Part shown: positions 6,095 to 59,998 of the stretch, in pieces
How the letters are laid out: each line of letters starts with the position of its first letter
How positions within the stretch are numbered: position 1 is the stretch's first letter
NCBI RefSeq assembly: GCF_006345805.1
Contig: NC_043002.1
Span: forward strand, 102,300,001-102,364,000
Source of the DNA: Octopus sinensis
Lineage: Eukaryota
Reading direction: 5' to 3'
Length of the DNA: 64,000 nt
The notes under the pieces: model-generated
The model's input: only the letters and a program-made list of their open reading frames with translations
Database searches by the model: none
What the model was told of the DNA's origin: nothing
Program-made: the position numbers and the translations under genes

Positions 6095-6152
<58 letters not shown>

Positions 6153-6155
6153 ATA

Positions 6156-6342
6156 TGTGTGTGTGTGTGGCGGGGTAGAGTATATGTATATATGTGTGTG
6201 TGTGGCGGGGTAGAGTATATGTATATATGTGTGTGTGTGTGGCGGGGTAGAGTATATGTATATATGTGTGTGTGTGTGTGGCGGGGTAGAGTATATGTAT
6301 ATATGTGTGTGTGTGTGGCGGGGTAGAGTATATGTATATATG
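6156..6342. repeat. Minisatellite, 5 copies of (GT)n-GGCGGGGTAGAGTATATGTATATAT
   Basis: Five identical GGCGGGGTAGAGTATATG cores separated by variable (GT)n. Confidence 0.95.
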
Positions 6343-10650: not shown

Positions 10651-12018
10651 GCAGTTGCTGTTTCTAGCCTGTCTAGTTACCAGGTAATATGATCACACGC
10701 TTTTGTCTGTGGATATGTATCGTTAAACAAAACTTGATTGAATTTGCAAGTCTGCCTTTATAGAAGTTAAATCTACATTGAGACAGATGTCTAAGTTCCG
10801 TAAGAAGGAAAACAATTCCGAATGTGTCACGTACATAAATGATGATTTGTCACTTCATTTCATTATCCGATATTTCTTCGGGAAATATCGGATTTCAATG
10901 ACATCTGATATTTCAAATACAATAGATTCTTGTAAACAATACTTTAACGAACATCTTTCATAAAATGAAGATTTCTTAAGGGGAACATATGTTTTGTAAC
11001 GAAACCTGGCAAAGTATTTGATCTAAAGGACAAATATATGGAGAGATTATATCAAGACTGAGCGGCAAGTTATTTTATTCATTTACAGGCTTCAGTCGTT
11101 GCACTGTGAAACGTGGAGGCATTCAACTTCAATGAGATTTTATTGATTATATCGACCTTTGTATTTTGTATGGAATATATGATTACTTTTATGTTGAGTT
11201 ATTTTATGTAATATGAGTTATAGAAAGTAAAAGCATAAAGGACATAAATGGGATAACGCAGTTATAATTTGATATACCTGTGGCCCCGTGCCGTCAAAAA
11301 TAACGGCTAATTGTTGTATTTTACATATAAATATGGAGGGTAAATCAAATTAATACACCTGTCAATATTATGTAGTGGTTGTCATTTTGAGATGTGACAT
11401 CGATCATCGTTTGTTACTGAAATAATGCTGGTTCACACCTACATTCACATACTTCCCTTGTACACGCACGCACATGCACACACATACACACACAGTCGAA
11501 ACGCTGTTTGATTTTTCTTTCATCACACTTCTATTGCACACACACGCTCACACATACTCACACAGACACACGTGCACAAACCCCCTTTTTACATACACAC
11601 ATTTATGTACTCACACAGTTGAAACGCCCCCACTGCAAGTTTGTCATCACACCTTCCTTCCTTATTCATCTATCACTCTTTCCTATCTCATATGTTGTGA
11701 CTGAGAAAAACACAAGAGTATTATTATTGTAGATTTGACCATCCATTGCCTACACACAAACTTATATACACATTCACGTACATACAAATATAGTATGAAA
11801 CACAAAAGTATACACACATATTGATATAGAGAATTAAATACATCAGTTCCCGGCCATACGTAACGTCCGGACGTCTATATTTACCAGCTTGTAAACGGTT
11901 TTTAGAATGCCTAATGGCATCAGGCAATATCTATATGTCTTTCGACATATGCAAGCTAATTAAATTTCATTTCGCAGGTTAATCCAATTGACATTTTACT
12001 AATTATAGCTCTTCAAAC

Positions 12019-12810
12019 ATGGAAGTGTCTATGGAGAATTTGCGACAAATAATATTTTATGAGTTTAAAAGAGGAAACTCTGCAGATGAAGCAACTTGAA
12101 ATATTCACTCACCTTATGGAAAAGATTGTCTGGGTGAAAGAACTTGCAGAAGATGGTTTGTAAAATTCAGAGGTGGAGCTTTCCGCCTTGGAGATGAGGC
12201 CCGAACTGGACGTCCATGAAAATGTCCCCAAACTCGGTAGATGTGTGCCTCATGATACATCTAAAGCCAAATGCAAATCCCGAGTGGATACCTGTTTTTC
12301 TATTCGTTCTCGTGTACTCATCTCGCCCGTTTTGTACGGACAGGTGACCGCTGATGCAAAAAATGGGTCTTCTATCAAAATGGTGAGCGACGTAGACGTT
12401 AGCTTTGTGAAGGGGAAAAGACCCATCCGCAACCGAAAAGATACATGCGAAGAAGGTTCTCTCTGTTTGGTGGGATTGCAAAGGAGATATCCCCTTTGGG
12501 TTGCTATCAACGAATGATACAGTCATTGCTCAAATCTACTGTTAGCAATTATAGCGTTTAAATGCTGCTTTGAAGATAAATATTCCCGGGTTTAGAGAAT
12601 AGAAAAGCAGTGGTGTTTAATCAGGACAATGCAAGACTCCACACTGGAAAGTTCACGTCATAGGAAATAGAGGTGTTTGGCTGGGAGAAAATTGCTCATC
12701 CACCTTACTCCCCAGACCGTGCTCCTTCAGATTACCATTTGTTCCGATTTTTGCAGAATCGTTTGGAAGGATTAACTCTCGAAACAACTGAGGAAGCTGA
12801 AACTAGATGA
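12019..12810 (+). mobile_element. Mariner transposase pseudogene (D,D34D), internally deleted
   Basis: MEVSMENLRQIIFYEFKRGNSA...ERTCRRWFVKFRGG..GDEARTGRP, PKLGRCVPHD, VTADAKW, QDNARLH and HPPYSPDRAPSDYHLF. I count 34 residues between the last two Asp. Contains stops and frameshifts. Confidence 0.95.
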
Positions 12811-13334
12811 GGTTTCATTAATGGGTTTAAAAAAATTACGCTAGAATATTTAATTAAATAAGCAGACAAATTTGCAGCAATTCTTCACTCTGGCTGTAAG
12901 ATAGTTAAAATCCTCTCACAAAAAAAAAATAATTATCCTCTTATCAAATAAACTGTATGACAATAGATTAATTGCCGTTGAATGAATCCTGTAACAGTCT
13001 GTATAGAATAACATGGAATCGAAAGCATATATAACCTAACCTAACATCTGAATATCTATAACTTTATGTATTCTCTATGATATTCTGCGAGATGTTGTAA
13101 TTTGAAGAATACCTGCAAGATAGGTACATTGAACAGTAGTAAATGTCAGAATAGCACCGCTAAAGTAGCGGCCACAGTAACATTTCTGCTCTTCTTTTTG
13201 GAGAAGACAAAACGACAGATAAGTCAATGGAAAAATTTGCCTTGAAGTCAACAGTTTGTAGCGAAGATTCCAAAGCTATGTTCCAGTTATGTTTAAGACG
13301 AAGTCTTCATATATACTTCATATAGTTTTCATAA

Positions 13335-13828
13335 TGATATGCATAAGATCTGGTCATCAAATCTAAGTAGAGATTTCAAACTTAAAATCTTCAAAGCCAC
13401 AGTCGAACCAATTCTACTATATGTCTCAGAAACCTGGACGTTATCAAAGAAGCTTGAGAGGCGGTTGGATGGAACTTACACTCGCCTCCTTATGAGAGCT
13501 CAAAATCTTTCGTGGAAGCATCATCCAACCAAAGTACAACTATATGGGAAATTACCACCTGTATCATCTCTTGTAAAAGGTAGAAGAGTCCAGTTTGCTG
13601 GATATTGTTGTAGAGCTGAAAACGAGGTAATTTCTACTCTTCTCTTCTCTTCTGGAAACCATCTGCTCGCGATACCAGGGGGCGCACACTCTCATACCCT
13701 GGAGTAATCTCCAGAAATACAGGCATCCAGCAACAGGACCTCCGTAATGCTATGACGGACCGTGAAGTCTGGCGTAACATAGTAAATTCCATTATCTCGA
13801 CCACGATCGAACAATGATGATGATGATA
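13335..13828 (+). mobile_element. 5'-truncated RTE-type (RTE-X-like) LINE 3' end with (TGA)n tail
   Basis: KIWSSNLSRDFKLKIFKATVEPILLYVSETWTLSKKLERRLDGTYTRLL...RRVQFAGYCCR; after a frameshift, ...DLRNAMTDREVWRNIV, then atgatgatgatga. Confidence 0.9.
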
Positions 13829-14675
13829 GAGTTTCAATTTATTTGCTCCTGATCATTTTCCGATCGACTGAACGTGAGTAATATTCGGGTAAACTGTATA
13901 ATAATTTTCTGGAACACAGTTAGCAATGTGTCTGTTCGTCTTTCTAACACATAAGCTATGAAACAGGACAGAAATGACTCCTATTCCTAGGAAATTGATC
14001 ATGATTGTTTTAATATGTTTCAAATTCTTCCCTGCAGAAATTGACATAAACGTGTATAAGTATCGATTTGTAACATTGGATCATTGAAGTGATTAACTCA
14101 GCTGATTAGCTCGATCCCTGTATTGGATTAGAGCAATCAAAGAAGGAACAAGTCCCAAAGTCGCTACCTTCGAAATTTCAAGTGGAAACATACTGGGTCA
14201 TAACTAAATAATGCAGGACATTTTGTCTGACCTCCTAAAGATTCTGCCAATTATACCCGTAATAGATTCAAACACTACAATCTTTGGAACGAAACCCAAG
14301 GGTCTTAATTTAGAAAAGAAGAGAATTACTTCAATGGGGTGTCGCGGGGTGATAAGGAACAACTTCTGGATATCCATCGACGAAGTTGAATAACTTGAGT
14401 CAGAGAGAGAGAGAGAGAAGAGAGAGATAGAGAGAGGGAGATCTTCGTAATATATATCTTGTCTCACTTCTCGTTATAAATGAAATATCGATAATACAAT
14501 TATCACCATACTCGGAGGAAAACTTATAAAGCTATAATTCGTATTACTCAAGAAACCGATATAATTAACTGCCATATTCACTCACCGTATCATTATTTAT
14601 AAATAGTTATTATTTATTTCTAGTGGATAGGAGTTTGTATTAATCTTTTAATCTCTTGTGTATTAATACACATAC

Positions 14676-15388
14676 ATACTTACATATATATATGTGCATA
14701 TATAAGTGTATAATGATATAAATGCATAAAATGCGCGCACACAAACATGTACACACACACATACACTCGTGTATATTGATGTGTGTTTCTAAACTTGATT
14801 GTTTCTCCATGGCAAATATGTCATTTGGTTTAATGATAGTGAAACGGATTGATGAGTACAGATAATTATTTGATACGAAATGATGGATACGAAGCGACGA
14901 ACTAATCCAGTTCAGTTCTTACAGGCTCCATAAAATAATGACAATTTACTCATCGCACCGTGTATGTATCTGTATGTATGTATGTATGTATGTATGTATA
15001 TATATTTATAGGATGAAATATTTTTCAAAAATCTCATTTTTGAAAAATATTTCATCCTATAAATATATATACATACATACATACATACATACAGATACAT
15101 ACACGGTGCGATGAGTAAATTGTCATTATTTTATGGAGCCTGTAAGAACTGAACTGGATTAGTTCGTCGCTTCGTATCCATCATTTCGTATCAAATAATT
15201 ATCTGTACTCATCAATCCGTTTCACTATCATTAAACCAAATGACATATTTGCCATGGAGAAACAATCAAGTTTAGAATCACACATCAATATACACGAGTG
15301 TATGTGTGTGTGTACATGTTTGTGTGCGCGCATTTTATGCATTTATATCATTATACACTTATATATGCACATATATATATGTAAGTAT
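14676..15388. repeat. Near-perfect 713-bp palindrome (arms 14676-15032 and 15036-15388, loop CTC)
   Basis: Base-by-base comparison: the arms are reverse complements apart from one substitution and one extra TGTA unit in the left arm. Confidence 0.97.
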
Positions 15389-16824
15389 ATTAAAATACCT
15401 TTATTTAATATGTAAGCATATTAAAATACCTTTAAAAGTGAAAATTATAAATAAGGGCAAAAGAAAAGGTCACTATGCCAATATGCTGAGAAATAGACTT
15501 TCAATCATCTTTCACCACATACAATATACATGACTATGATTACACGTTTGCCTTTCCCAAGGGTGCTTGTAAGTATTTCTTTTATTTCCTATCGTATTCT
15601 CTACTGATGAGGGGGAAATCCCTTGGACTAATCCCGAAGCTGATTCAATATAAAAATAACGCATTAGAAGAAAAAAGTCTGTTACCTTGCTTTCCTCGAT
15701 TTCAGTGGAACATGTATTCATTATGAAGTATATTGTATGAGGTGATTGACGATTTAAAGTCTATTTCTCGGCATATTGACATAGAAATCTTTTTTCTTTT
15801 GCCCTTATTTATAAGGATATCAAATTATTTATCGCAATTCTAGGTGCGTTTTCATATTATTCAAATATATTCATGCAAACTTTCACACACGGATATGTTC
15901 AACATGAAACACAGGCGAGTAAAGAGTCTTACACACTAATAAGCAGATTTGGTCTCCGTATGGTTGCTTTACCAAAAGTCAACTGCCGAAAGTCTTTCTT
16001 TAAATGATTCGTAAGAAACAGATTTGTAACTGTTTCTCTGGAAGTTTTAAGCCTTCCGTCTTATGTGTGTGTGCGTGTGTGTATGTATGTATATACACAT
16101 GACCGCAGTGGAATGACTGAAAAAATTGAAAGAATATATATATATACATATACACACACACACACACACATATATGTATATATGCATATATATATGTACA
16201 TGTATGTATGTACAGATGCGTGTGTAAATGTTCGTAGTTCCCCTTCATTGATAATTTTCGTTTCTATGTTTTCTAATAAAACTCAAATTTCGCAATAGAA
16301 AATGGCAATGAAGTCCATTTTCGATGAAATGTGAGTCTGTTATAACACGTGATTGTATTCATATCGATGATATATATAAAAAAAATAGGTAGATATATGA
16401 TACACACAGAACTAGAAAGATGTTGGATTGAACAAAAAGACAAGCGATAACGCCATAATATACTAGAAATGGTAAATGTATCCTACCTTAGAAAGCAACT
16501 CCGCTTCTTTGCTAAACATGCTGCTGTGGAATTCTGTGGAATATTTATTTGCAAATATTTATGAAAATTTTCGGCAATATGCTCTGAAGAAGTACTTTTT
16601 TTTCAGTTTTGAAAATTTTAATCTCTTAAAAATGACAATGAATCATTTAGATAGTTTCATGTACAAGCCTATGAACAAAGAAACACCTATACACACACAC
16701 ATACAAGCACGCACACACACAGACACATACATCCAAACATGTAATAATGTTAAATATATCCACGCATACTCATGCATAAAACATTATGTATATGCAGTTT
16801 GCACATATACAGGTATGGAAATAT

Positions 16825-35832: not shown

Positions 35833-36244
35833 GGAGAGAGAGATGGAGTGTGTGTATGTGTGTGTTGAGAAAGTAGTGACGTTTAATACAAAATAACAAG
35901 TTTATTAAGGTCGGAATTTTTAGAACGTCTCCGCCGTGTAATAATTGCTAATTGCTACGGACTTCTTGAACCTATATTGTTTTCTGTACAACAAAGCAAG
36001 ACTGGTTTGGTTCGAGAGGAGATATTGGATTGAAGGCAGCCAATGTCCGAAGTCTAATAACAAAGGATGAGTTACTAAAGTGAGGATGACTGTTAAACAG
36101 AGAGTGAGAGAGAGTGGGGGTGGAAGTAAGGGGTAATTGACTTAATGGAATACATCCCAAATAATAGCAACAGGTGAAAGTATATTTATATATTCGTACA
36201 AATTCAGCAGACGTTATTAGTATGGTTTTCGAAAGTAAATTCGC

Positions 36245-37095
36245 CTATACATACACATATATATACACACACATACATCTTCATACATATATATATATAT
36301 ACATATACATACATATATACATACATACATATACATACATATATACATACATACATATATACATGCATACATATATATATAATATACATATATATATACA
36401 TATATAATACATACATATATGCATACATATATACATACATATACATACATATATACATACATGCATATATATATACGTATACATATATATATACATACAT
36501 ATACATACATATACATATATATACGTATACATATATATATACATACATATACATACATATACATATATATACATATATATATACATACATATATATATAC
36601 ATATAAATATACATACATATATATATATACATATATTACATATATATATATATATATATATACATATATATACATATATATATATAACATATATATATAC
36701 ATATAAATATACATACATATACATATATATATACATACATACATACATATATATACATACATACATACATATATATACATACATACATATATATATACAT
36801 ACATACATACATACATATATATATACATACACATATATATATATACATACACATATATATATACATACACACATATATATACATACATACACATATACAT
36901 ACATATATACATACATACATATATATATATATATACATATATATATGTACATGCATATATATATATGTATATACATATATACATACATAAATATACATAT
37001 ATATACACATTCATATATGACATACATAGATATGCATACATAAATATATAGATATACATATATATACGCACACACGCATATATATATATCTATAT
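36245..37095. repeat. About 850 bp compound (ATAC)/(AT)n microsatellite
   Basis: Directly visible; explains the 142-284 aa Y/I/M/C/V ORFs. Confidence 0.97.
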
Positions 37096-37766
37096 ATTAA
37101 AAGTAATTAAAAGGGCAAGCAACAGGCTGCTTCGCCGCATACCGAAGGAATTAGAAATGGCAGTCAAAGACTGCTTTTTCCATTTTCTATAAGTGGAGAT
37201 TCCATATACGACGGACCCCGCGATTCACATACGCAAAATCGGAGTAGCAAATAAACGAAAACAATCTCTTACCGTTAATAGTGAACATGTTTCTAGATCA
37301 CAGGCTCGAAAATAGCTTGATTTCCTTTGTCAACACTATATTCGATAGGTTTATCAAATGCCACAAGCCCTCACCTCTGACCAAGTGACATCAGATAGTG
37401 GGGGGAAGTGTGCAGATTTTAAAACTAAGTAATGACTGGGAACGTAAATTTTCCCTCCAAAATTCTGCCAAGCGCGCCGTCTGGGTGATCGCAATGGAAT
37501 AAGAAATCCACATGGTAATACAATAAAAATAGCTTGATTTCCTTTTTTCGAGCTTGTGATCTAGAAACATGTTCACTATTAACGGTAAAAGATTGTTTTC
37601 GTTTATTTGCTACTCCGATTTTGCGTATGTGAATCGCGGGCTCCGTCGTATATGGAATCTCCACTTATAGAAAATAGAAAAAACAGTCTTTGACTGCCAT
37701 TTCTAATTCCTTCGGTATGCGGCGAAGCATCCTGTTGCTTGCCCTTTTAATTACTTTTACTATATA
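37091..37766. mobile_element. Foldback element with about 220-bp inverted arms
   Basis: Arms 37091-37312 and 37545-37766 are near-identical reverse complements. The spacer is about 230 bp. TATA lies at both outer ends. Confidence 0.85.
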
Positions 37767-40560: not shown

Positions 40561-42923
40561 GTGTGTGTGTATTCTCTGATTGAGCGATATTGGGAGATAG
40601 ATTACATATACAAAGTCAGTGTTTTGTACAGATAAATGGACAAGCTTACCTGATGAATATAAACATTTATACGTAGACTAAATGATGGTAGATTTATAAA
40701 CAGTCTGTTTATAAGAAAATTGCAAAGCTTAATAGTGCATGGCTTACAAATGGAAATCATGTAATAGCAGATATCGTGCATATATTCCCATGCTATCCTA
40801 TTACTTCCGGAGTTGAATTGACGCATTCGAAAAAATTTAAGACAGTCTCATAGAATAGCACGTTCCTTCTGTCTACTTTTTCATTTCAAATTTCGTCGAA
40901 GTTAAAGTTGTATTCACTATTCTGGGGTCGATATAATATACCAGTCGATTACTGGGTCTGATGAAGCTTTTTGTCTCTCTCTTAGATATTTGATGTCGCG
41001 TTTTGAGGTGATTTTTATTTTATTTCATGTCATTTTTCTTCCGTAATTGAATCGGATAGATCTTAGAAGAACTTGTTCTCATAAAAATATAATTTACTGC
41101 AAAAAACAGGGGCTGGAAATGAAGCATTATTAAATTTGAATATTATGTTTACCTTGGTTATTGCATTAATATTGGAAGGCGATAAACTGACAGGATAGTC
41201 TCCACGCGACTTCAAAATGCTTTTAAGCATCTTTCCGAATTGATCTTTAGTGAAGGACGACATTTCAGCGACCCGTGGAATAAACTGTTCATTTGTTAAT
41301 CAAAGCCTTACAAATAACTTATTTCTGCAGCACAAAATGCCTCCTTGCATACAAGAGATAAATTCTTTGAAGCGTTGCCAGCTCTATACCAAACAAAACT
41401 AACTTTCATAAGAAGAGGTACCGAGATGCCTCGCCTTATGAACATTAACAGTAAACTTCATTAAATCCTGAAATACTCACTTACATACCAATGATGCACC
41501 ACATCATATCTTGTTAACATTTTCAACAGAAATGCCATCCAGATGAAATAGAAATCACTCAAACCATGACTACCATGTTTTCAGAAAAAAAAATTTGAAA
41601 TCCAGCTTGAACACACAGATACTTCCCTCGATATCCTGCACCCCACCCAAGCTATTCACAGATAACACATCACAAAATCCTTTATAAATTTAGATACAAT
41701 AAACCTCGCAAAATGTGACTCTTTTTTTTTTTATCAGAAACCTAAACTGCATCAAACTTGATCCAATTCATTTCTAAGTTTTGTATAGAAATGCATTGTG
41801 GTTACGCTGCGGCACCACACAGGTAACCCTCATTTGTTTGGCAGAAATTTAACCGATTGGTAACAGTTCACTCGTGCTCCCTCTCATCAATTACTTTTCA
41901 TTGAATTCAATTTATTGTTGCCAACAGTGCCGGTCTTGCACCTGAAATTTTCTCAATATATTTTACTTGTATCTAGAGCTCCCTCGAAAATACTCTGCCT
42001 AATTATTTCTTCTGTAGAAACCTACGTTTCTTCACGTTCAGCAAAAGATCCGTGCATCATTGTTACATCTGTGGAAGGTCCGAAAATATCAGGGCTGTGC
42101 CCGTCGCTATTCTGTGAAATATCTAGAAATGCCAACGCACATACAAACAACACACTCACAGATACAAATATATGACGTATGTATCTCCCCTTAGGAGGAC
42201 TCGCTTTATCAGACCCCAGGGTTATGGGCTGGCTTCTTTTCGGATGTAATTGGATAACATAGGAATATATGCACAATGTGTGCTACTATGTGATTTCCAT
42301 TTGTTAGCAGTGCACTTTGCAAATTACTTATAAAAACACTGTCTATGAATCTACCATCGTTTAGTCTACGAGTAAACATTTATATTCATCATCAAGGCCC
42401 GATATTTTATCTGTACAAAACATTAGTTTTGTATATATGATCTTTCTTCAAACATCACTCTGTCTGAGAATACACTCAGTCGAACTGGGTGGGCGTATAA
42501 CAACAAACCAGCCGACACAAAATATCTCTACTGAAACTTCTTTATCATTGTACCTGAAGAGACCCAATAAGTCTATTATGAAATCCATCTCCTGCTATTA
42601 TTAATACTATTACCTTAACTTCCATTTCAAAGTTCCTGAAGTAAATCCAACGGAAGTGTACCACAACTACAGATGACAACAGCTAACCTGAACTGTGCTG
42701 GAGCTGTACTCAGCATTTAAACATGCTAATCTAATTATACGTATTCATTTTAATTTTATATATACATACACACACACAGTGTGCGATGGGTATATTGTCA
42801 CCATTTTATATTTCTAAATTCGCAGATCCTGCCTCCCTTGTAAGTCATTAAGATTGTGATTCTGAGGCTAGTAAGGTGTTTTGACTCTTATCTCTAGCAA
42901 CGCTAGTTTTGATTAGTTCCTTT

Positions 42924-42959
<36 letters not shown>

Positions 42960-42963
<4 letters not shown>

Positions 42964-44170
42964 TAGATATGTTTCGATCAAAGATTGGTCCAGGTCATGT
43001 CTAACTTAATAGCACCACCTGATAGGATTATTCGAATCCTCTTTAAGTCAAGTTTTGTTTATGGTCCATTCAAGTAGTGAGTTCTTGTTGGGTGAGTTGT
43101 ATCCAATTATGGGTGGCTTATCTGGTATTCTTTGATGGAATCTATCCAGACTCCGTTTAAAGTTGATGGGATCCTTTTCCTCTTTGATCTCCCTCGGGTC
43201 AATGTTAAATAGGGCAGGGCCTGTTGATGAAAAGAAATTATGTTGCAGTGTACATGTATGCTGTGATCTTGAATTGGGAAGGGGACGTATGGCCCGTGGT
43301 CCCAGTCTTGGATCAACCTTGAAGCTATTTTAGAAAAAAAAATGAAAAATAGCTCAGAATTGCAGAGAAGACAGAATTCCTTGCCTTTGTCATATGGTAT
43401 CGAAATTGGGAGAATCAACCATTCTAAATAAAATTGTTTATTGTGGTCTTTTAAATCCCAAATCAGTTTGCTGAGACCGGTACTATTACGTTTATTTCTA
43501 TCCCTAAATGTTGCGTAATGGATAGAAATTCTTTTAGATAACTCTAACGATGTGCTTCCAATGTAAAATCGTACTTTATTACGAGTACTGATTATACACT
43601 GGTATACAGAATTTTTAATCTTAGAGTTACTTGACATAAACTTAATTCTATTGGAATTGACTTCAGATACAACAACCTTGTTATTAATATTTCTAGAGGG
43701 TTGGATAGTATTAGCTAAATTAATGTTAGTATTAGTAAATGTATTAATATTTAACAGTTTGTTATTATGTGAAGAGATAATTTGCAAGAGATATTTTGTG
43801 TTTGAAAAACCTATCCTGACCTTATGTGAATTGATAATAGAGTAATATCTAGAATTGTTTGGAAAATTCCTAGCAATAGCTTGACGAAACAGCAGTGGGA
43901 GATTAGATTTAATTTGTCTCCCGTAAGGAATTATTAACCAAATATTTTTACTAGTATTCATAGCGTAATTACTTTTGAAGGTGTTATATTTACTTTTAGA
44001 TCGATAATAGGGGATTAAATAAGGGATATCTGCCGTCATTCGCTTTGTATCGGTGCGTAAGTTATGTTTATTATCAATAATTCTTTTACGACTAGAAATC
44101 TTATCTACATTATTGAATTTACAATTAGACTGAGCAGAATCAATGTAGAAAATTATCTCTGTATAACCTG
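42960..44170 (-). mobile_element. 5'-truncated Penelope-like element (RT thumb/linker plus GIY-YIG endonuclease)
   Basis: NIWLIIPY..QIKSNL..FRQAIARNFP...RYYSIINSHKVRIGFSNTKYLLQIISSHNNKLL; GIY-YIG VYQCII...FYIGST...KRISIHYATF...STGLSKLIWDLK...LEW...FCLLCNSE. The element ends next to (TA)n(TG)n. Confidence 0.9.
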
Positions 44171-45247
44171 CTTTAAACAAGGTAAACATACACTCATCTA
44201 TATATATATATATATACACAAACATTGATATATACACTCTTTTTATGTCATGTATGCAAGTAATATTTTTGCAACAATTTATTATACATCGAAAAATGAA
44301 CACACAATATATATTGCGGAATAAATATTTATCGTATTATGATAGCCGAAAGTGACAGCATACCTATACTTTATTCGTACTGCCAAGAAAAATTCATCTT
44401 CTGATAATATATCTAGATGTTCACTACAGCAGTGCCTGATAATAATTAAGACCAGTTAAGTTATCATTCCTTGAATTCAGTCTTTCTCATTCGCTTGTCA
44501 TCCATATAAAATACAAATGGCTGGGAGGTAATATAGTAGAATGTTTCTGAAGACTTCTTCAACTGTTAAAAATCCGTCAATCTGTCTGTATAATAAACAA
44601 GCAGAAAGAAGACCGATAAAGGAAATAGAGACAACGTATATATGAAAGAGAAAAATGTTTTGTAGTGTAATAAACAATGATATTACCTGATATTGTTTTG
44701 TATTTCAAAGAAAGCATCTTTGAACTTTAAGAGATAATTTTTAGCGATACTTTCATTGGTCAGATAAAATTGGAATGAAATGATGCGGAAATATGTAATA
44801 TTATATTTTGTCTGTGTAACTAGATTTATTTTTTATTACCTTTTTAAATAGTAATATTGCAAATATATGACAAAGGTTACTGGAAATCAGAGAGACAAAA
44901 ACCACGCTTGATTCATTAAATAAACAAATGCTTAAAAGTGTAGGAGAAGAAATTTGTTTTAAGTACAGCAACACAGCAAGTAAATGTGTTACGCTGTTCT
45001 ACTGGAAGAAACATACGAAATACAGACATGGTACGTGGTGTGGATACGCAGGTATATGCACGCACACCCCCACAGACACGAGCACACACCCACACACATT
45101 ATATATATATATATATATTTGTTGTATTTAGGAATGGTCACTTTGCCAGTTTAGCTAATAATATATATATAAGTATATTTGTATACATGATTATATATTT
45201 ATATATGTATATATATATAAGTATATTTATATACATATTTATATATA

Positions 45248-49412: not shown

Positions 49413-50532
49413 TAACGCAAGGATATGGGGGTTATGTGATCCTGTGTTAGAGTTATTGTGTATATATACACAAACTCATACATAAACACACATATACATA
49501 CATAGATGTCCTGCCTGAGATATAGTTTTATAACGGTCATTCTACGTTCAAGCTAAGTACATATAACACTGAATTACGAAATAAACATACATTCACATAT
49601 GAACAATATCTGAATATAAATATCTATAATTGCTACGCATATGTGCAGGCATGTGCCGTGATGTATGTGACAGTTGAAATTGAAAAAGAAAATATCTTAT
49701 GAAACACACACACACGTATATGTATGTATACAATAACACAGGTATGCATGTATTTGTGTGTGTATGCGTATATATATATATTTATATGTATTTATATCTA
49801 TTTATATTTATTTATATCTAAATATATTTATATTATATTTATTTATATATAGACAGAGAGAGATATATATACACGCGTTTAGATGTGTTACTGATATGGT
49901 TTCCTGTATATTCACATATCGTTCTCCAAACACTGAAGATTGTTTACAGCCAACAGACTCTGCTGAGTTATAATATATCATTACGATTTAATATAAACCT
50001 TCATTTTATTCAGCCAGGAATATTGCTGCTGTCATTGGAAATTACCAATCGTTCTTATTCCTCAGAATATGTTTCAAAGCGTTGCATAATAGCTATAAAT
50101 TCTACAGAAATTCGATACACTCTCTCTGGACTCGAATTACAAATATCCATCTATATTAATATCTTCAAGTTTTCTGCGAATAGTATGAAACCCCGTAATT
50201 TTCACAGAATACTGACCCAAGGGAAGCGTACGCGTACACGCATATTTCATGATTAATTTATATGCATATATGTGTGTGAATGTGATTTTGTATGTATACA
50301 TATACGGTATACATGTATGTGTTTGTGAATATGTGTGTGTATATATACATCAATATCTAAACATTATATATATATATATATATATAAATAAATGTATATG
50401 TATACTGTGTGTGCGTATATTCATTTACACATGTACGTATTTATATACACTGGCGCACGCACATATTTTTAACATGCACGCTTATTCTGATAGATGTAAA
50501 GAGTCAAGTATATAACAAAATGCAATTTTATA

Positions 50533-50688
50533 TATATGCATACATATAGGTATATGTATATATATATATATATGCATACATATAGGTATATGTATATATA
50601 TATATATGCATACACATAGGTGTATGTATATATATATATGCATACATATAGGTGTATGTATATATATATATATGCATACATATAGGTG

Positions 50689-56300: not shown

Positions 56301-56362
<62 letters not shown>

Positions 56363-56364
<2 letters not shown>

Positions 56365-56637
56365 GTGAAGGGAAGAAATGGAGCTGGACGAAGATTCTAT
56401 AGAATTCCTTTTATTACATTCTACACATGTTTCAAAGGCCACAAATTTCCAAATTCTGATTGAATAAGGATACCATATTGCAGCTTTCTCTTCAGAAAAA
56501 TCCAGGAATTACGATGTCCAAAGAAAACAAAATTCTGGAATCAGAATTTGGAAATTTGTGGCCTTTGAAACATGTGTAGAATGTAATAAAAGGAATTCTG
56601 TAGAATCTTCGTTCAGCTCCATTTCTTCCATTCACTA
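56363..56637. mobile_element. Inverted-repeat element (99-bp arms, 77-bp spacer) carrying a hammerhead-like motif; Penelope pLTR-like
   Basis: Arms 56363-56461 and 56539-56637. The minus strand has CTGAAGA (56495-56489), stem II and GAAAC-ATGT-GTA. The element abuts (TC)n(TA)n. Confidence 0.75.
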
Positions 56638-57515
56638 ATTATATTAAACTTCAATTATCCGCGCCAACGCACGGTTGCAACACCCTATGGTCATAACTGC
56701 AACCGTGTTTTTCCTGCTGTGATTTTTGCTACCCAGGTATCGGTTAAACTTTTGAATAATCCGTAACAAGATAATTCATCTTTCCATTTCAACAAACATA
56801 TATATATATATATCATTTATAAACAAACGCGAAAGGCTTTGTAGGATACGGAGTAAGGTAAAATAAATAAAACAAAATAGATTAAAAATAGATAAATGAA
56901 TAGACTCACAAAATATGGTCTTTCACGCCTTAAAAATTCATTATTCAGCTAGACTAATAAAGGTATGGGATAAAACAATTAAAAGTTTCAGATATGCAGC
57001 GCGCCCTTCGTGAGATACTGGATGTAAATTGTTAAGAAGCAGAAGTAAGTAGATATAGTATTTAACATAAATAAAAATTAAAGGGAATAAATATATGATA
57101 ATTTAAGTATCCATAAGGGCTTAAATATGGGTGAATTCAACAAGTTAAATTAAAGCATACTAATAAAATTATTTAAATAGTTAAGAATAATTCGCTCAAA
57201 ACCGAAAGCAGATATTTGATAAAAAGGTGAAGAGCTAAAAACAGGTGAGAATAATTTAAAGCGAAACCAGGTAGAAATAAATATGAACAGTTTACAGTGA
57301 GTTAGAATATAGCTTCAGGTTGGTTTTATACAGTACAAATAATTTAGTGAGGAAGAGCCAATAAAACTGAGAACAATCTAATTTAGGGACATACAACAAA
57401 TGAGACCGCATAAATAAAAACTATATTTTACAGTCAATAAGAAAATAGCTAAAATGTGAGGGTTTTTTTAATAGAATAATTCAAAATTAATGCAAATACA
57501 ACTTATTATAATAAA

Positions 57516-58761: not shown

Positions 58762-59998
58762 AGGCACTAAGTCAATTGTTTTGAAACCTAGCATATATTG
58801 ATGTCATAATTATACCTAACAATATTATCCTTATCTTTTCAGAAACTTTTTCCCATATGAGTAATCAAGAAAGAAAACGCCAAAGAGTGTGTGATTTGCT
58901 GAATGCACTCATCACACCAAAGGAGATTTCAAGAATAGTTGGAGTGTCCATAAAGACTGTATTATGTAAAGAATAGAATGACTATGAGCAAAACTATTAT
59001 GAGGAAGAATGGAAGTGGAGGAATCAACAAAAAACGTATCAAAGATTTTATTAAAGCTCTCAAATCCCAAATACTAAAGGATCCAACCAAATCCATGAGA
59101 AAAATTGCAATGGAACTTGAGATGGACAACAAGACCATTAGAAATGCAGTAAAATTTAATTTGAGGTTAGAATCTTACACAAGAACACCAAAACACTTGT
59201 TGACAACAGCTATGAAGGAAAAGAGATTGGAAAGGTGCAAGAACATTATTACATGTTTCAAGAAAAAGTCCTACATTGTAACGATCTCTTCAAATGAAAA
59301 GATCTTCACTGTCGATGCTGTTCTGAACCGCAGAAATGACAGATTTATCGCAAAATCGACAATTGAGATTAAGAGGACATTCAAAACAAAACACCGTGCT
59401 CATGTTATGTCTTTTGGTGTTGTGGTTTCCGATGGAAAGGAAATGCCTATAACATTCTACAAAGCTGATGAAAAGATCAATGTTAATACTTACTACAAGA
59501 CTCTGAGGTACCAGGTATTACTATGGCTTAAATAAAGCTACCCAGATGGTAATTATGTATGGACACAGGATGGTGCTCCAGCCCACACTGCAGAAATCTT
59601 GTATTTTCCTGGCTAATACAAATTTAGCAAATTTTTGGAATCATGTTTATGGCAGCCTTCTAGCCCAGATCTAAACATTCCGGATTATGTTATTTGGGGC
59701 TTTTTAGAACATGGAAGCAAAATAACATCATCGAGCAACGTCGACTCTCTTAAAAATAAAATTAAAGAAGAATGGGAAACGTTGTCTCCCGAATATTTGA
59801 GGAACGCTTGAGCAAGTTTCAGTAAGCGTATAAAAGCAGTTATTGAGAAAGAAGGAGGACACATAGCATAACACGTTTTTGCTCTTATGTAAATTTTCTT
59901 CTAGCAAATAAATTCTCATGACAATCAATAAACTAATTGGTCATACAATGACTTTAAATCCCTGCCTCAAAATATTGAAACATTTTGCTACCCCACCC
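58762..59998 (+). mobile_element. IS630-Tc1-mariner transposon, D,D37D (maT-type), inactive; transposase 58857-59871
   Basis: MSNQERKRQRVCDLL...HTH region, SSNEKIFTVDAVLNRRNDR (first D mutated to N), HVMSFGVVVSDG, TQDGAPAHT, WQPSSPDLNIPDY. I count 37 codons between the last two Asp. One 5' frameshift and internal stops. The right end is ...gctaccccaccc|TA; no left TIR was seen. Confidence 0.92.

What the first reader, a model, noticed from the sequence alone, without database searches (positions are those of the whole stretch)
14676..15388. 713-bp near-perfect palindrome with a 3-nt loop
The arms (357 and 353 bp) differ by only one substitution and one TGTA unit, with a CTC loop at 15033-15035. 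They contain mixed content: microsatellite, unique sequence and a transposon-end-like motif (cacggtgcgatgagtaaattgtca, similar to about 42780). This argues for a foldback duplication of ordinary genomic DNA rather than a MITE. If real, it can extrude a cruciform and, if transcribed, form a roughly 350-bp dsRNA hairpin, a potential ADAR or siRNA substrate (extensive A-to-I editing is established in coleoid cephalopods). A library or assembly foldback artefact is the main alternative.
Basis: partly seen in the sequence, partly recalled or inferred. Interest (0 to 1): 0.7.

Follow-up and report, generated by a model that had tools for sequence, protein, structure and literature searches.

The report
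Young 713-bp palindrome in octopus-like DNA
A 357-bp stretch of ordinary, repeat-rich non-coding DNA sits next to an almost identical inverted copy of itself, most likely a recent DNA-repair or replication accident, and nothing here shows that it has a function.

Summary
Arms 14676-15032 and 15036-15388 pair around a CTC loop. They differ by one substitution (14786/15278) and one TGTA unit. The boundaries are sharp and the unique core of the arm has no third copy in the window.

The arms are mixed ordinary DNA: degenerate (CATA)n/(TA)n, a unique core, a 29-nt motif shared with 42781-42809, a (TGTA)n tract, and 36 nt of AT-rich sequence.

The best reading is a real, young, interstitial inverted duplication. 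It was probably made by foldback (snap-back) priming or template switching at an A5/T5-rich centre. The outer junction was probably closed by microhomology: a 27-nt direct repeat straddles the right boundary.

A read-scale foldback artefact does not fit, because the right flank is not the reverse complement of the left flank. A two-switch chimera cannot be excluded without reads. A mobile foldback element or MITE is unlikely (low-complexity ends, no informative target-site duplication), but genome-wide copy number could not be tested.

Transcription, editing and small RNAs could not be tested. Octopus genomes are already reported to be unusually rich in loci able to form long, near-perfect dsRNA, so this is a new member of a known kind. 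Interest is modest.

The parts
14676..15032 (+). Left arm of the palindrome (357 nt)
   Evidence: Alignment and repeat pairs I1/I3. In order, the arm contains degenerate (CATA)n/(TA)n/(CA)n, a unique core of about 170 nt, the 29-nt motif, (TGTA)n, and 36 nt of AT-rich DNA.
15033..15035 (.). Unpaired centre, CTC (3-nt loop or spacer)
15036..15388 (-). Right arm (353 nt), the reverse complement of the left arm apart from one substitution and one TGTA unit
14786..14786 (.). The only substitution between the arms: T here opposite T at 15278
14961..15003 (+). (TGTA)n tract, 10.2 copies. Its mirror (TACA)n at 15065-15103 has 9.2 copies. This is the only indel between the arms.
14938..14962 (+). Motif ATGACAATTTACTCATCGCACCGTG directly upstream of the microsatellite, mirrored at 15102-15126(-). 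A relative with 25/29 identities lies at 42781-42809(-), also followed by a microsatellite in the same orientation.
15020..15048 (.). Centre: ATTTTTCAAAAAT-CTC-ATTTTTGAAAAAT. Each arm tip is itself a 6+1+6 mini-palindrome. AAAAAT/CTC/ATTTTT is a possible snap-back seed. The central 75 nt have only 13% GC.
   Evidence: Read directly from the sequence; GC content. The seed role is inferred.
15377..15434 (+). A 27-nt direct repeat with period 31, 26/27 identical: ATATGTAAG[T/C]ATATTAAAATACCTTTA. The first copy straddles the right boundary of the palindrome, with 12 nt inside and 15 nt outside.
   Evidence: Family D5. Such repeats occur at only about 10 loci in 64 kb.
14668..14687 (+). Left boundary inside a degenerate 4-nt-periodic tract, ACAC ATAC | ATAC TTAC ATAT. 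ATAC appears on both sides of the junction.
   Evidence: Read directly from the sequence.

Best explanation
This is a real, evolutionarily young, interstitial inverted duplication: a 713-bp near-perfect palindrome of ordinary non-coding, transposon- and microsatellite-rich DNA in an octopus-like genome.

Inferred mechanism. A break or stalled fork occurred next to the AT-rich tract ...ATTTTTCAAAAATCTC.... A 3' end folded back, or switched to the complementary strand, with only a few base pairs of seed. About 353 nt of its own sequence was copied back. The new end was then joined to the other side by microhomology.

The last 12 nt of the right arm (ATATGTAAGTAT) match 11/12 a site 31 nt further on. 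The 15 nt that follow that site are also present twice. This looks like an annealing, extension and re-annealing (templated-insertion) scar. On this reading the left arm is the original and the right arm is the copy. The opposite polarity, with a pre-existing 31-bp tandem duplication, is not excluded.

The palindrome probably has no selected function. By its structure it can extrude a hairpin or cruciform (3-nt spacer, 36-bp perfect AT-rich inner stem). It is expected to be a fragile or deletion-prone site. If it lies in a transcript, it would form a dsRNA of about 350 bp.
For: Shown:
- The arms are 99.4% complementary over 709 aligned columns, with a 3-nt centre.
- There is no similarity beyond the arms above shuffled or genomic controls.
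- The core of the arm is single-copy in the window.
- The surrounding 12 kb has no other duplications apart from the neighbouring inverted-repeat element at 15445-15814 and a tandem repeat near 17 kb. There are no Ns in the window.
- Both outer boundaries lie in low-complexity (CATA/TA)n-like DNA.
- A 27-nt direct repeat straddles the right boundary. Comparable repeats occur at about 10 loci per 64 kb, so a chance overlap with a boundary is about 1-2%.
- The centre is 13% GC and carries A5/T5 mini-palindromes.

From the literature:
- Foldback priming at short inverted repeats near breaks, and templated inverted insertions closed by NHEJ or alt-EJ, are established (PMC10622511, PMC11724301, PMC5728401, PMC2943611).
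- Pol theta can start stem-loop synthesis from 2 bp (PMC11292364).
- Long-read foldback artefacts are read-scale and symmetric about the read midpoint, and are a small minority of reads (PMC12870357).
- Octopus has an exceptionally high fraction of loci able to form long, near-perfect dsRNA (PMC5625713).
Against: No reads, second assembly or second individual could be examined, so whether the structure is real rests on argument. Experimentally documented foldback insertions at breaks are mostly 5-34 bp (PMC11724301), about ten times shorter than this. The polarity and the templated-insertion reading of the right junction are not unique: a pre-existing 31-bp tandem duplication explains the same letters. 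The seed at the centre cannot be seen, because any seed becomes part of the palindrome. Genome-wide copy number of the arm is unknown.
Confidence: 0.6

Rival explanations
1. Assembly or library artefact. One arm does not exist in the animal. It came from a chimeric molecule with two template switches (amplification, gap filling from a single raw read) or from a mis-traversed assembly graph.
For: Near-identity of the arms is what the two strands of one molecule would give. The two differences, a microsatellite unit and one base, are compatible with residual consensus error. Foldback chimeras exist in long-read data and can recur at a site (PMC12870357). Amplification produces palindromic chimeras (PMC6218980).
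Against: Documented foldback reads fold at about the read midpoint and continue as the reverse complement of the upstream sequence. Here the complementarity stops after 353 nt, and unrelated unique DNA continues to the end of the window, about 48 kb. An artefact would need read support for two novel junctions, the centre and one outer boundary. Such reads are a small minority and are normally outvoted by the consensus (PMC12870357). There are no Ns or gap signatures in the window, and it holds no other palindrome with a spacer this short.
Confidence: 0.17
2. A mobile foldback element or MITE. The whole 713-bp unit is a transposon copy that inserted here.
For: The window holds several other hairpin-like inverted-repeat elements: 15445-15814, 37091-37766 and 56356-56644. 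A TA can be read at both ends (14677-78 and 15386-87). Porath et al. note approximately palindromic repeats as dsRNA sources in the frog (PMC5625713).
Against: The termini are low-complexity (TACTTACATATATATATGTGC...), not specific transposase-type ends, and they resemble none of the other inverted-repeat elements. The TA is self-complementary and uninformative in 70-78% AT DNA. The interior is a patchwork of three microsatellites, a motif shared with another locus, and flank-like DNA. There is no other copy in 64 kb. No relatives turned up in any accessible collection. The other inverted-repeat elements have spacers of 77-226 nt and 79-96% arm identity, unlike this one.
Confidence: 0.07
3. 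An older palindrome whose arms are kept identical by arm-to-arm gene conversion, possibly because the hairpin is used, for example as a long hairpin RNA source.
For: Arm-to-arm conversion is well known for large palindromes (general knowledge). The octopus shows very high hyper-editing of dsRNA-forming loci (PMC5625713). hpRNA loci are long inverted repeats (PMC10317233).
Against: There is no decayed extension of the palindrome beyond the sharp boundaries. No gene-derived sequence or protein-family signal is present in the arms. Rfam gives nothing at gathering thresholds, and only generic both-strand hairpin hits below threshold. A 3-nt spacer would make long persistence difficult.
Confidence: 0.08

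Closest known systems
Human palindromic AT-rich repeats (PATRR11, PATRR17, PATRR22)
   Same: Both are single-locus, non-coding, near-perfect palindromes of several hundred bp with central symmetry and an AT-rich centre. PATRRs are about 190-600 bp, and their cruciform extrusion depends on length and central symmetry (PMC1851657). This one is 713 bp with a 3-nt spacer, a 36-bp perfect inner stem and a central GC of 13%.
   Different: Overall AT content is only 69%. There is a 4-nt bulge 37-70 nt from the tip. Polymorphism, breakage and translocation are unknown here. The two share no sequence relationship.
Foldback (snap-back) templated inverted insertions at double-strand breaks (SD-MMEJ, Pol theta end joining, the yeast Pol delta plus NHEJ pathway)
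   Same: The inverted copy directly abuts its template, with a spacer of a few nt. The distal junction carries microhomology and a locally templated direct repeat (PMC11724301, PMC5728401, PMC2943611).
   Different: Documented events are mostly 5-34 bp. This copy is 353 nt. No break, enzyme or ancestral allele is known here.
Local inverted repeats that form long, near-perfect dsRNA and are hyper-edited in octopus
   Same: It is a long, nearly perfect intramolecular duplex in an octopus-like genome. Such loci are reported as exceptionally frequent in Octopus bimaculoides, 4.4e-3 of random 50-mers (PMC5625713).
   Different: According to that paper, most such structures come from two neighbouring inverted copies of an interspersed repeat. 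Here the two copies abut and include non-repeat DNA. Transcription and editing are untested.
Drosophila hpRNA loci and plant proto-miRNA inverted duplications
   Same: A long inverted duplication that would give a hairpin RNA if transcribed (PMC10317233, PMC10292708).
   Different: Those arms derive from target genes and yield siRNAs. Here no gene-derived sequence was found and no small-RNA data exist.
Long-read foldback artefacts
   Same: Near-perfect forward and reverse concatenation with little or no sequence between the halves (PMC12870357).
   Different: The artefacts are read-scale and symmetric about the read midpoint. This structure is 353-357 nt per arm and is embedded between unrelated flanks of 14.7 kb and 48.6 kb.

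Membership tests
PATRR-like palindromic AT-rich repeat | Near-perfect palindrome of hundreds of bp | tested here: met
   713 bp; 704/709 aligned columns complementary.
PATRR-like palindromic AT-rich repeat | Central symmetry (no or minimal spacer, no mismatches near the tip) | tested here: met
   3-nt spacer, then 36 perfectly paired bp. For comparison, a 9-nt spacer plus 4 mismatches abolishes extrusion in PATRR22 (PMC1851657).
PATRR-like palindromic AT-rich repeat | AT-richness | tested here: inconclusive
   GC is 30.7% overall against 35% for the window, so the enrichment is weak. It is strong only at the centre (13% GC over 75 nt) and at the ends.
PATRR-like palindromic AT-rich repeat | Size and symmetry polymorphism, breakage at the centre, recurrent rearrangement | not testable with these tools
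   Needs population and read data.
MITE / foldback transposon | Target-site duplication flanking the element | tested here: inconclusive
   The flanks ...ACACATAC and ATTAAAAT... are not direct repeats. Only a self-complementary TA can be read inside the ends.
MITE / foldback transposon | Multiple dispersed copies | tested here: inconclusive
   There is no other copy in the 64-kb window or in any accessible collection. The source genome itself could not be searched.
MITE / foldback transposon | Specific terminal sequences shared within a family | tested here: not met
   The termini are microsatellite-like and differ from those of the other inverted-repeat elements in the window.
Foldback-primed templated inverted duplication at a break | Inverted copy contiguous with its template, with a spacer of a few nt | tested here: met
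Foldback-primed templated inverted duplication at a break | Microhomology or templated sequence at the distal junction | tested here: inconclusive
   An 11/12-nt match plus a duplicated 15-mer lie at the right junction, with a chance overlap of about 1-2%. A pre-existing tandem duplication is an alternative explanation.
Foldback-primed templated inverted duplication at a break | Typical length (mostly 5-34 bp in yeast amplicon data) | tested here: not met
   353 nt against PMC11724301.
Read-scale long-read foldback artefact | The second half continues as the reverse complement of everything upstream | tested here: not met
   The flanks beyond the arms score no better than shuffled or genomic controls.
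hpRNA / endo-siRNA hairpin locus | Arms homologous to a target gene; transcribed; yields siRNAs | tested here: inconclusive
   The arms contain no protein-family or homologous ORFs, and the window holds no second locus related to the arm core. Expression is not testable.
Rfam miRNA precursor families | Score at or above the family gathering threshold | tested here: not met
   There are no matches at gathering thresholds. The best sub-threshold hit is MIR6217 at 94 bits against 110, on both strands, with plant or microsatellite-type families only.

The most novel reading that the evidence does not exclude
The palindrome is real and transcribed. It would then be a newly born hairpin-RNA locus in a cephalopod: a near-perfect dsRNA of about 350 bp made from non-genic DNA. 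It would either be hyper-edited by ADAR or diced into endo-siRNAs. It would also be a PATRR-like fragile site outside mammals, with the formation scar still readable at its junction.
Probability: 0.1. Interest if true: 0.5.

Novelty: new member of a known kind. Interest (0 to 1): 0.3.

Why it matters
If real, this is a very fresh example of how a genome acquires a long perfect hairpin from ordinary DNA, and both junctions are still legible. It could serve as a natural test case for foldback or template-switch repair in a mollusc. It adds one concrete locus to the reported excess of dsRNA-forming sequences in octopus. If it is an artefact, it shows that assembly errors can mimic editing substrates. 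Either way it is a single neutral-looking locus with no evidence of function, so its value is illustrative rather than conceptual.

Tried and rejected
1. An older, decayed palindrome extending beyond the arms. Local alignment of 60, 120 and 300 nt of flank scores no better than shuffled or genomic controls.

2. The left arm as the 3' UTR and tail of the upstream LINE (RT tail ORF 13339-13707). Homology to two independent copies (L014 at 90%, L015 at 71%) ends at 13827, which is 850 bp before the arm.

3. The 29-nt motif as the 3' terminus of the element that encodes ORF 43107-44303(-). The O. sinensis relative shares coding and 3' segments but lacks the motif. In the window the shared 3' segment ends at about 42932, upstream of the motif.

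4. A tRNA-derived SINE head in the arm. ARAGORN finds nothing.

5. Known RNA families. None reach gathering thresholds. Only generic hairpin hits appear below threshold.

6. Independent copies of the locus.
- Exact-product look-ups for ORFs that cross the centre or the right junction found none.
- A 25-mer from the arm in the metagenome collection found 0.
- The degenerate motif in the metagenome collection gave 12 matches with no extension into the arm. Three contigs (L002, L008, L009) share 27/30 nt with the 42.8-kb copy only.
- A 760-aa concatenation of arm and flank reading frames against 5.8 billion proteins found none.

7. Two independent SINE or LINE insertions lying tail to tail. Rejected because identity runs through the microsatellite tail and 36 nt of non-element DNA to the centre.

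8. Inverted repeats in two other octopus-like loci as a control. L001 has only microsatellite-based ones and L015 has none, so this is uninformative.

Full report
**1. The observation**

Reading 14400-15700 and aligning the left half with the reverse complement of the right half confirms the finding as described. The arms are 14676-15032 (357 nt) and 15036-15388 (353 nt), around an unpaired CTC at 15033-15035.

The arms differ by one substitution and one TGTA unit:
- The substitution is 14786 T opposite 15278 T.
- The pure TGTA run has 7 units on the left and 6 on the right. Tandem Repeats Finder gives 10.2 versus 9.2 copies.

The repeat finder recovers the same structure independently. A self-alignment gives 704/709 complementary columns.

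The predicted single-strand fold is one continuous hairpin. The DNA fold is -417 kcal/mol against -75 +/- 4.5 for shuffles (z = -76). The RNA fold is -602 against -162 (z = -79). Chance is excluded.

**2. Boundaries and uniqueness**

Complementarity stops abruptly. 60, 120 or 300 nt of left flank against the reverse complement of the right flank scores no better than shuffles or random genomic segments.

The non-microsatellite core of the arm has no other copy in the 64-kb window. The only exception is a 29-nt motif, described in section 3.

The 12 kb around the palindrome contain no other duplications apart from a neighbouring inverted-repeat element and a tandem repeat near 17 kb. The window has no Ns and is 35% GC.

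**3. What the arms are made of**

Reading the left arm from outside to centre:
- a degenerate (CATA)n/(TA)n/(CA)n region
- about 170 nt of unique sequence
- the motif ATAAAATAATGACAATTTACTCATCGCACCGTG
- the (TGTA)n tract
- 36 nt of very AT-rich DNA ending in ATTTTTCAAAAAT

Its core does have one: a 21-mer with 3 mismatches at 42781-42801(-), with 0 expected by chance, and 25/29 identities by BLAST.

At both loci the motif is followed, in the same orientation, by a microsatellite: (TGTA)n here and (TG)n TATGTATATATA there. This fits the end of a small repeat unit associated with simple-repeat tails. I could not name a family.

Three tests of the motif's origin led nowhere:
- It is not the end of the upstream LINE. 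Homology to two independent copies ends at 13827.
- It is not the end of the element encoding ORF 43107-44303. The Octopus sinensis relative lacks it.
- There is no tRNA-like head.

**4. Context**

Upstream lie a degenerate mariner (Mos1-type HTH, E = 9e-17) at about 12.0-12.95 kb and a LINE reverse-transcriptase tail at 13332-13827.

Starting 57 bp downstream of the palindrome is a 370-bp hairpin-like inverted-repeat element (15445-15814, arms about 83% identical). The window holds three more:
- 37091-37766: 225-nt arms, 96% identical, 226-nt spacer
- 56356-56644: 91% identical over its length
- 40564-40809 paired with 42241-42478: 79% identical

No host-gene exon was recognised near the palindrome.

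The organism is probably an octopod. The best protein hit for a window ORF is to Octopus sinensis at 41% identity. The LINE has 90%-identical relatives in ENA assemblies. The species was not identified.

**5. Real or artefact**

No reads or second assemblies were accessible. All attempts to find the locus elsewhere failed. The argument is therefore indirect.

Heinz, Meyerson and Li (PMC12870357) describe long-read foldback artefacts as follows:
- They are reads whose two halves map to the same place on opposite strands.
- They are symmetric about the read midpoint.
- They make up about 0.6% of ONT genomic reads and virtually none of the HiFi reads.
- Other reads at the same site show no breakpoint.

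Such a read would continue after the right arm as the reverse complement of the left flank. Here it does not.

Any artefact therefore needs two template switches 353 nt apart, and support for two novel junctions in the consensus. Amplification chimeras (PMC6218980) or a gap filled from one chimeric raw read could do that. I keep the artefact reading at about 0.17.

The single substitution and the microsatellite-unit difference fit either a very young real duplication or residual consensus error, so they do not discriminate.

**6. Junction anatomy (shown) and formation model (inferred)**

Three features of the junctions are shown directly:

(a) Centre. ATTTTTCAAAAAT-CTC-ATTTTTGAAAAAT has 13% GC over 75 nt. 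Each arm tip is itself a small palindrome. AAAAAT/CTC/ATTTTT is the kind of 6-bp, 3-nt-loop seed used in foldback priming.

(b) Right boundary. A 27-nt direct repeat, ATATGTAAG[T/C]ATATTAAAATACCTTTA (15377-15403 and 15408-15434, 26/27 identical), straddles the boundary with 12 nt inside the arm and 15 nt outside. Non-simple repeats of this kind occur at about 10 loci in the window. A chance overlap with one of the two boundaries is therefore about 1-2%.

(c) Left boundary. It lies inside a 4-nt-periodic tract, ACAC ATAC | ATAC TTAC ATAT. This suggests that the left arm is continuous with its flank.

Inferred model:
- A break or stalled fork occurred just right of ...CAAAAATCTC.
- The 3' end snapped back, or switched strand.
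- About 353 nt was copied.
- The new end ...ATATGTAAGTAT annealed to ATATGTAAGCAT in the right-hand DNA (11/12 match).
- That end copied 15-19 nt, dissociated, and re-annealed at TTTA.
- The result is the 31-bp duplication.

Every step has precedent:
- Foldback priming at short inverted repeats near breaks: PMC10622511.
- Templated inverted insertions closed by NHEJ or alt-EJ: PMC11724301.
- Snap-back synthesis-dependent MMEJ: PMC2943611 and PMC5728401.
- Stem-loop extension by Pol theta from 2 bp: PMC11292364.

However, documented events are mostly 5-34 bp. This one would be an unusually long example.

The mirror-image polarity is not excluded. In that case the right arm is ancestral, the 31-bp tandem duplication was already present, and the left junction has 4-nt ATAC homology. 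I favour the first polarity about 60:40.

**7. Transposon reading**

The window is rich in MITE-like hairpins, which raises the prior for this reading. This unit differs from them in several ways:
- It has a 3-nt spacer and 99% arm identity.
- Its interior is a patchwork with three microsatellites.
- Its termini are low-complexity and unlike those of the other elements.
- There is no informative target-site duplication. Only a self-complementary TA can be read.

Copy number in the genome could not be tested. I put this reading at about 0.07.

**8. Function**

Nothing indicates a selected function. At gathering thresholds Rfam finds nothing in the window. With a relaxed threshold the centre matches several plant miRNA families with long stems, and the microsatellite-rich mir-466 and mir-297. 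These matches are on both strands and all below threshold (best 94 bits against 110). They reflect hairpin shape and base composition only. The reading frames in the arms have no protein-family or homologue signal.

What the structure can do follows from general knowledge:
- The human PATRRs (about 190-600 bp) extrude cruciforms in proportion to their length and central symmetry. A 9-nt spacer plus four mismatches abolishes extrusion (PMC1851657). With 713 bp, a 3-nt spacer and a 36-bp perfect AT-rich tip, this locus is on the extrusion-prone side.
- If transcribed, it would be a duplex of about 350 bp with one U:U mismatch and one 4-nt bulge.
- Porath et al. report that Octopus bimaculoides has an exceptionally high fraction of loci able to form long, near-perfect dsRNA (4.4e-3), and one of the strongest hyper-editing signals among the animals they surveyed (PMC5625713).

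It also places this locus in an already described class.

**9. Verdict**

- Observation: confirmed.
- Interpretation: partly supported.
- Best explanation: a real, young, foldback or template-switch inverted duplication with no demonstrated function (0.6).
- Rivals: artefact (0.17), an older palindrome kept identical by gene conversion and possibly functional (0.08), a mobile element (0.07).
- Novelty: new member of a known kind.
- Interest: 0.3.

The decisive data are read-level k-mer depth and junction support, PCR in several individuals, the orthologous site in relatives, and RNA and small-RNA mapping.

Noticed in passing
window 15445-15814: A 370-bp hairpin-like inverted-repeat element starts 57 bp downstream of the palindrome. 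Its arms are about 106 nt and 83% identical, with termini TTATAAATAAGGGCAAAAG... It looks MITE-like and is single-copy in the window. A transposase-induced break here could have triggered the neighbouring foldback, but this is speculation.
   Followed up: partly
window 37091-37766: A 676-bp element with 225-nt terminal inverted repeats (96% identical) and a 226-nt spacer. TATATA lies at both ends, so a palindromic target-site duplication is possible. It abuts the large microsatellite block at 36.2-37.07 kb.
   Followed up: partly
window 56356-56644: A 289-bp element that is an inverted repeat over its whole length (91% identical, with a 106-nt core at 95%). Its termini are TAGTGAAkGGAAGAAATGGAGCTG, and it lies next to a (TA)n run.
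   Followed up: partly
window 40564-40809 and 42241-42478: An inverted repeat of about 240 nt (79% identical) separated by about 1.4 kb. It lies just beside the second copy of the 29-nt motif and the GIY-YIG-like ORF.
   Followed up: no
window 43107-44303 (-): A 398-aa ORF with a GIY-YIG-like motif by eye (FYIGSTS...H) and no Pfam hit. The best relative is the Octopus sinensis protein named 'myb-like protein I' (41% identity). Weaker relatives carry PF26215. The O. sinensis locus shares about 72-75% nucleotide identity over coding and 3' segments. This is probably an uncharacterised mobile element.
   Followed up: partly
window 42781-42925 (-): A unit of about 145 bp bounded by (TA)n(CA)n on one side and (TG)n on the other. 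It ends in the 29-nt motif shared with the palindrome arm. Three metagenome contigs with 36-37% GC (L002, L008, L009) share 27/30 nt with this motif and nothing more. This is unexplained.
   Followed up: partly
window ~12000-12950 (+): A degenerate mariner transposase with stops and frameshifts. The N-terminal part matches the Mos1 HTH_48 domain at E = 9e-17, and typical C-terminal motifs (HPPYSPDxAPSDYHLF) are visible.
   Followed up: partly
window 13332-13827 (+): The C-terminal tail and 3' end of a LINE reverse transcriptase. About 100 relatives occur in ENA 'metagenome' assemblies at up to 90% identity (for example ERZ27289496 and ERZ25072740). Those assemblies therefore contain DNA from the same or a related host species.
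   Followed up: partly
window 36200-37075: A compound (TAYA/TGYA)-type microsatellite block of about 870 bp. It produces spurious ORFs of up to 284 aa (runs of YIYMYV...). Many of the window's long ORFs are of this kind.
   Followed up: no
window 6150-6290 and 50525-50650: Minisatellites with periods of 35-39 nt and 32-34 nt, built from microsatellite-plus-unique units. Short tandem duplications of this size are common in the window, at about 10 loci.
   Followed up: no
window 58978-59535 (+): A 185-aa ORF with a weak Tc3-type transposase HTH match (E = 7e-4, below the Pfam threshold). It is probably a Tc1/mariner remnant.
   Followed up: no
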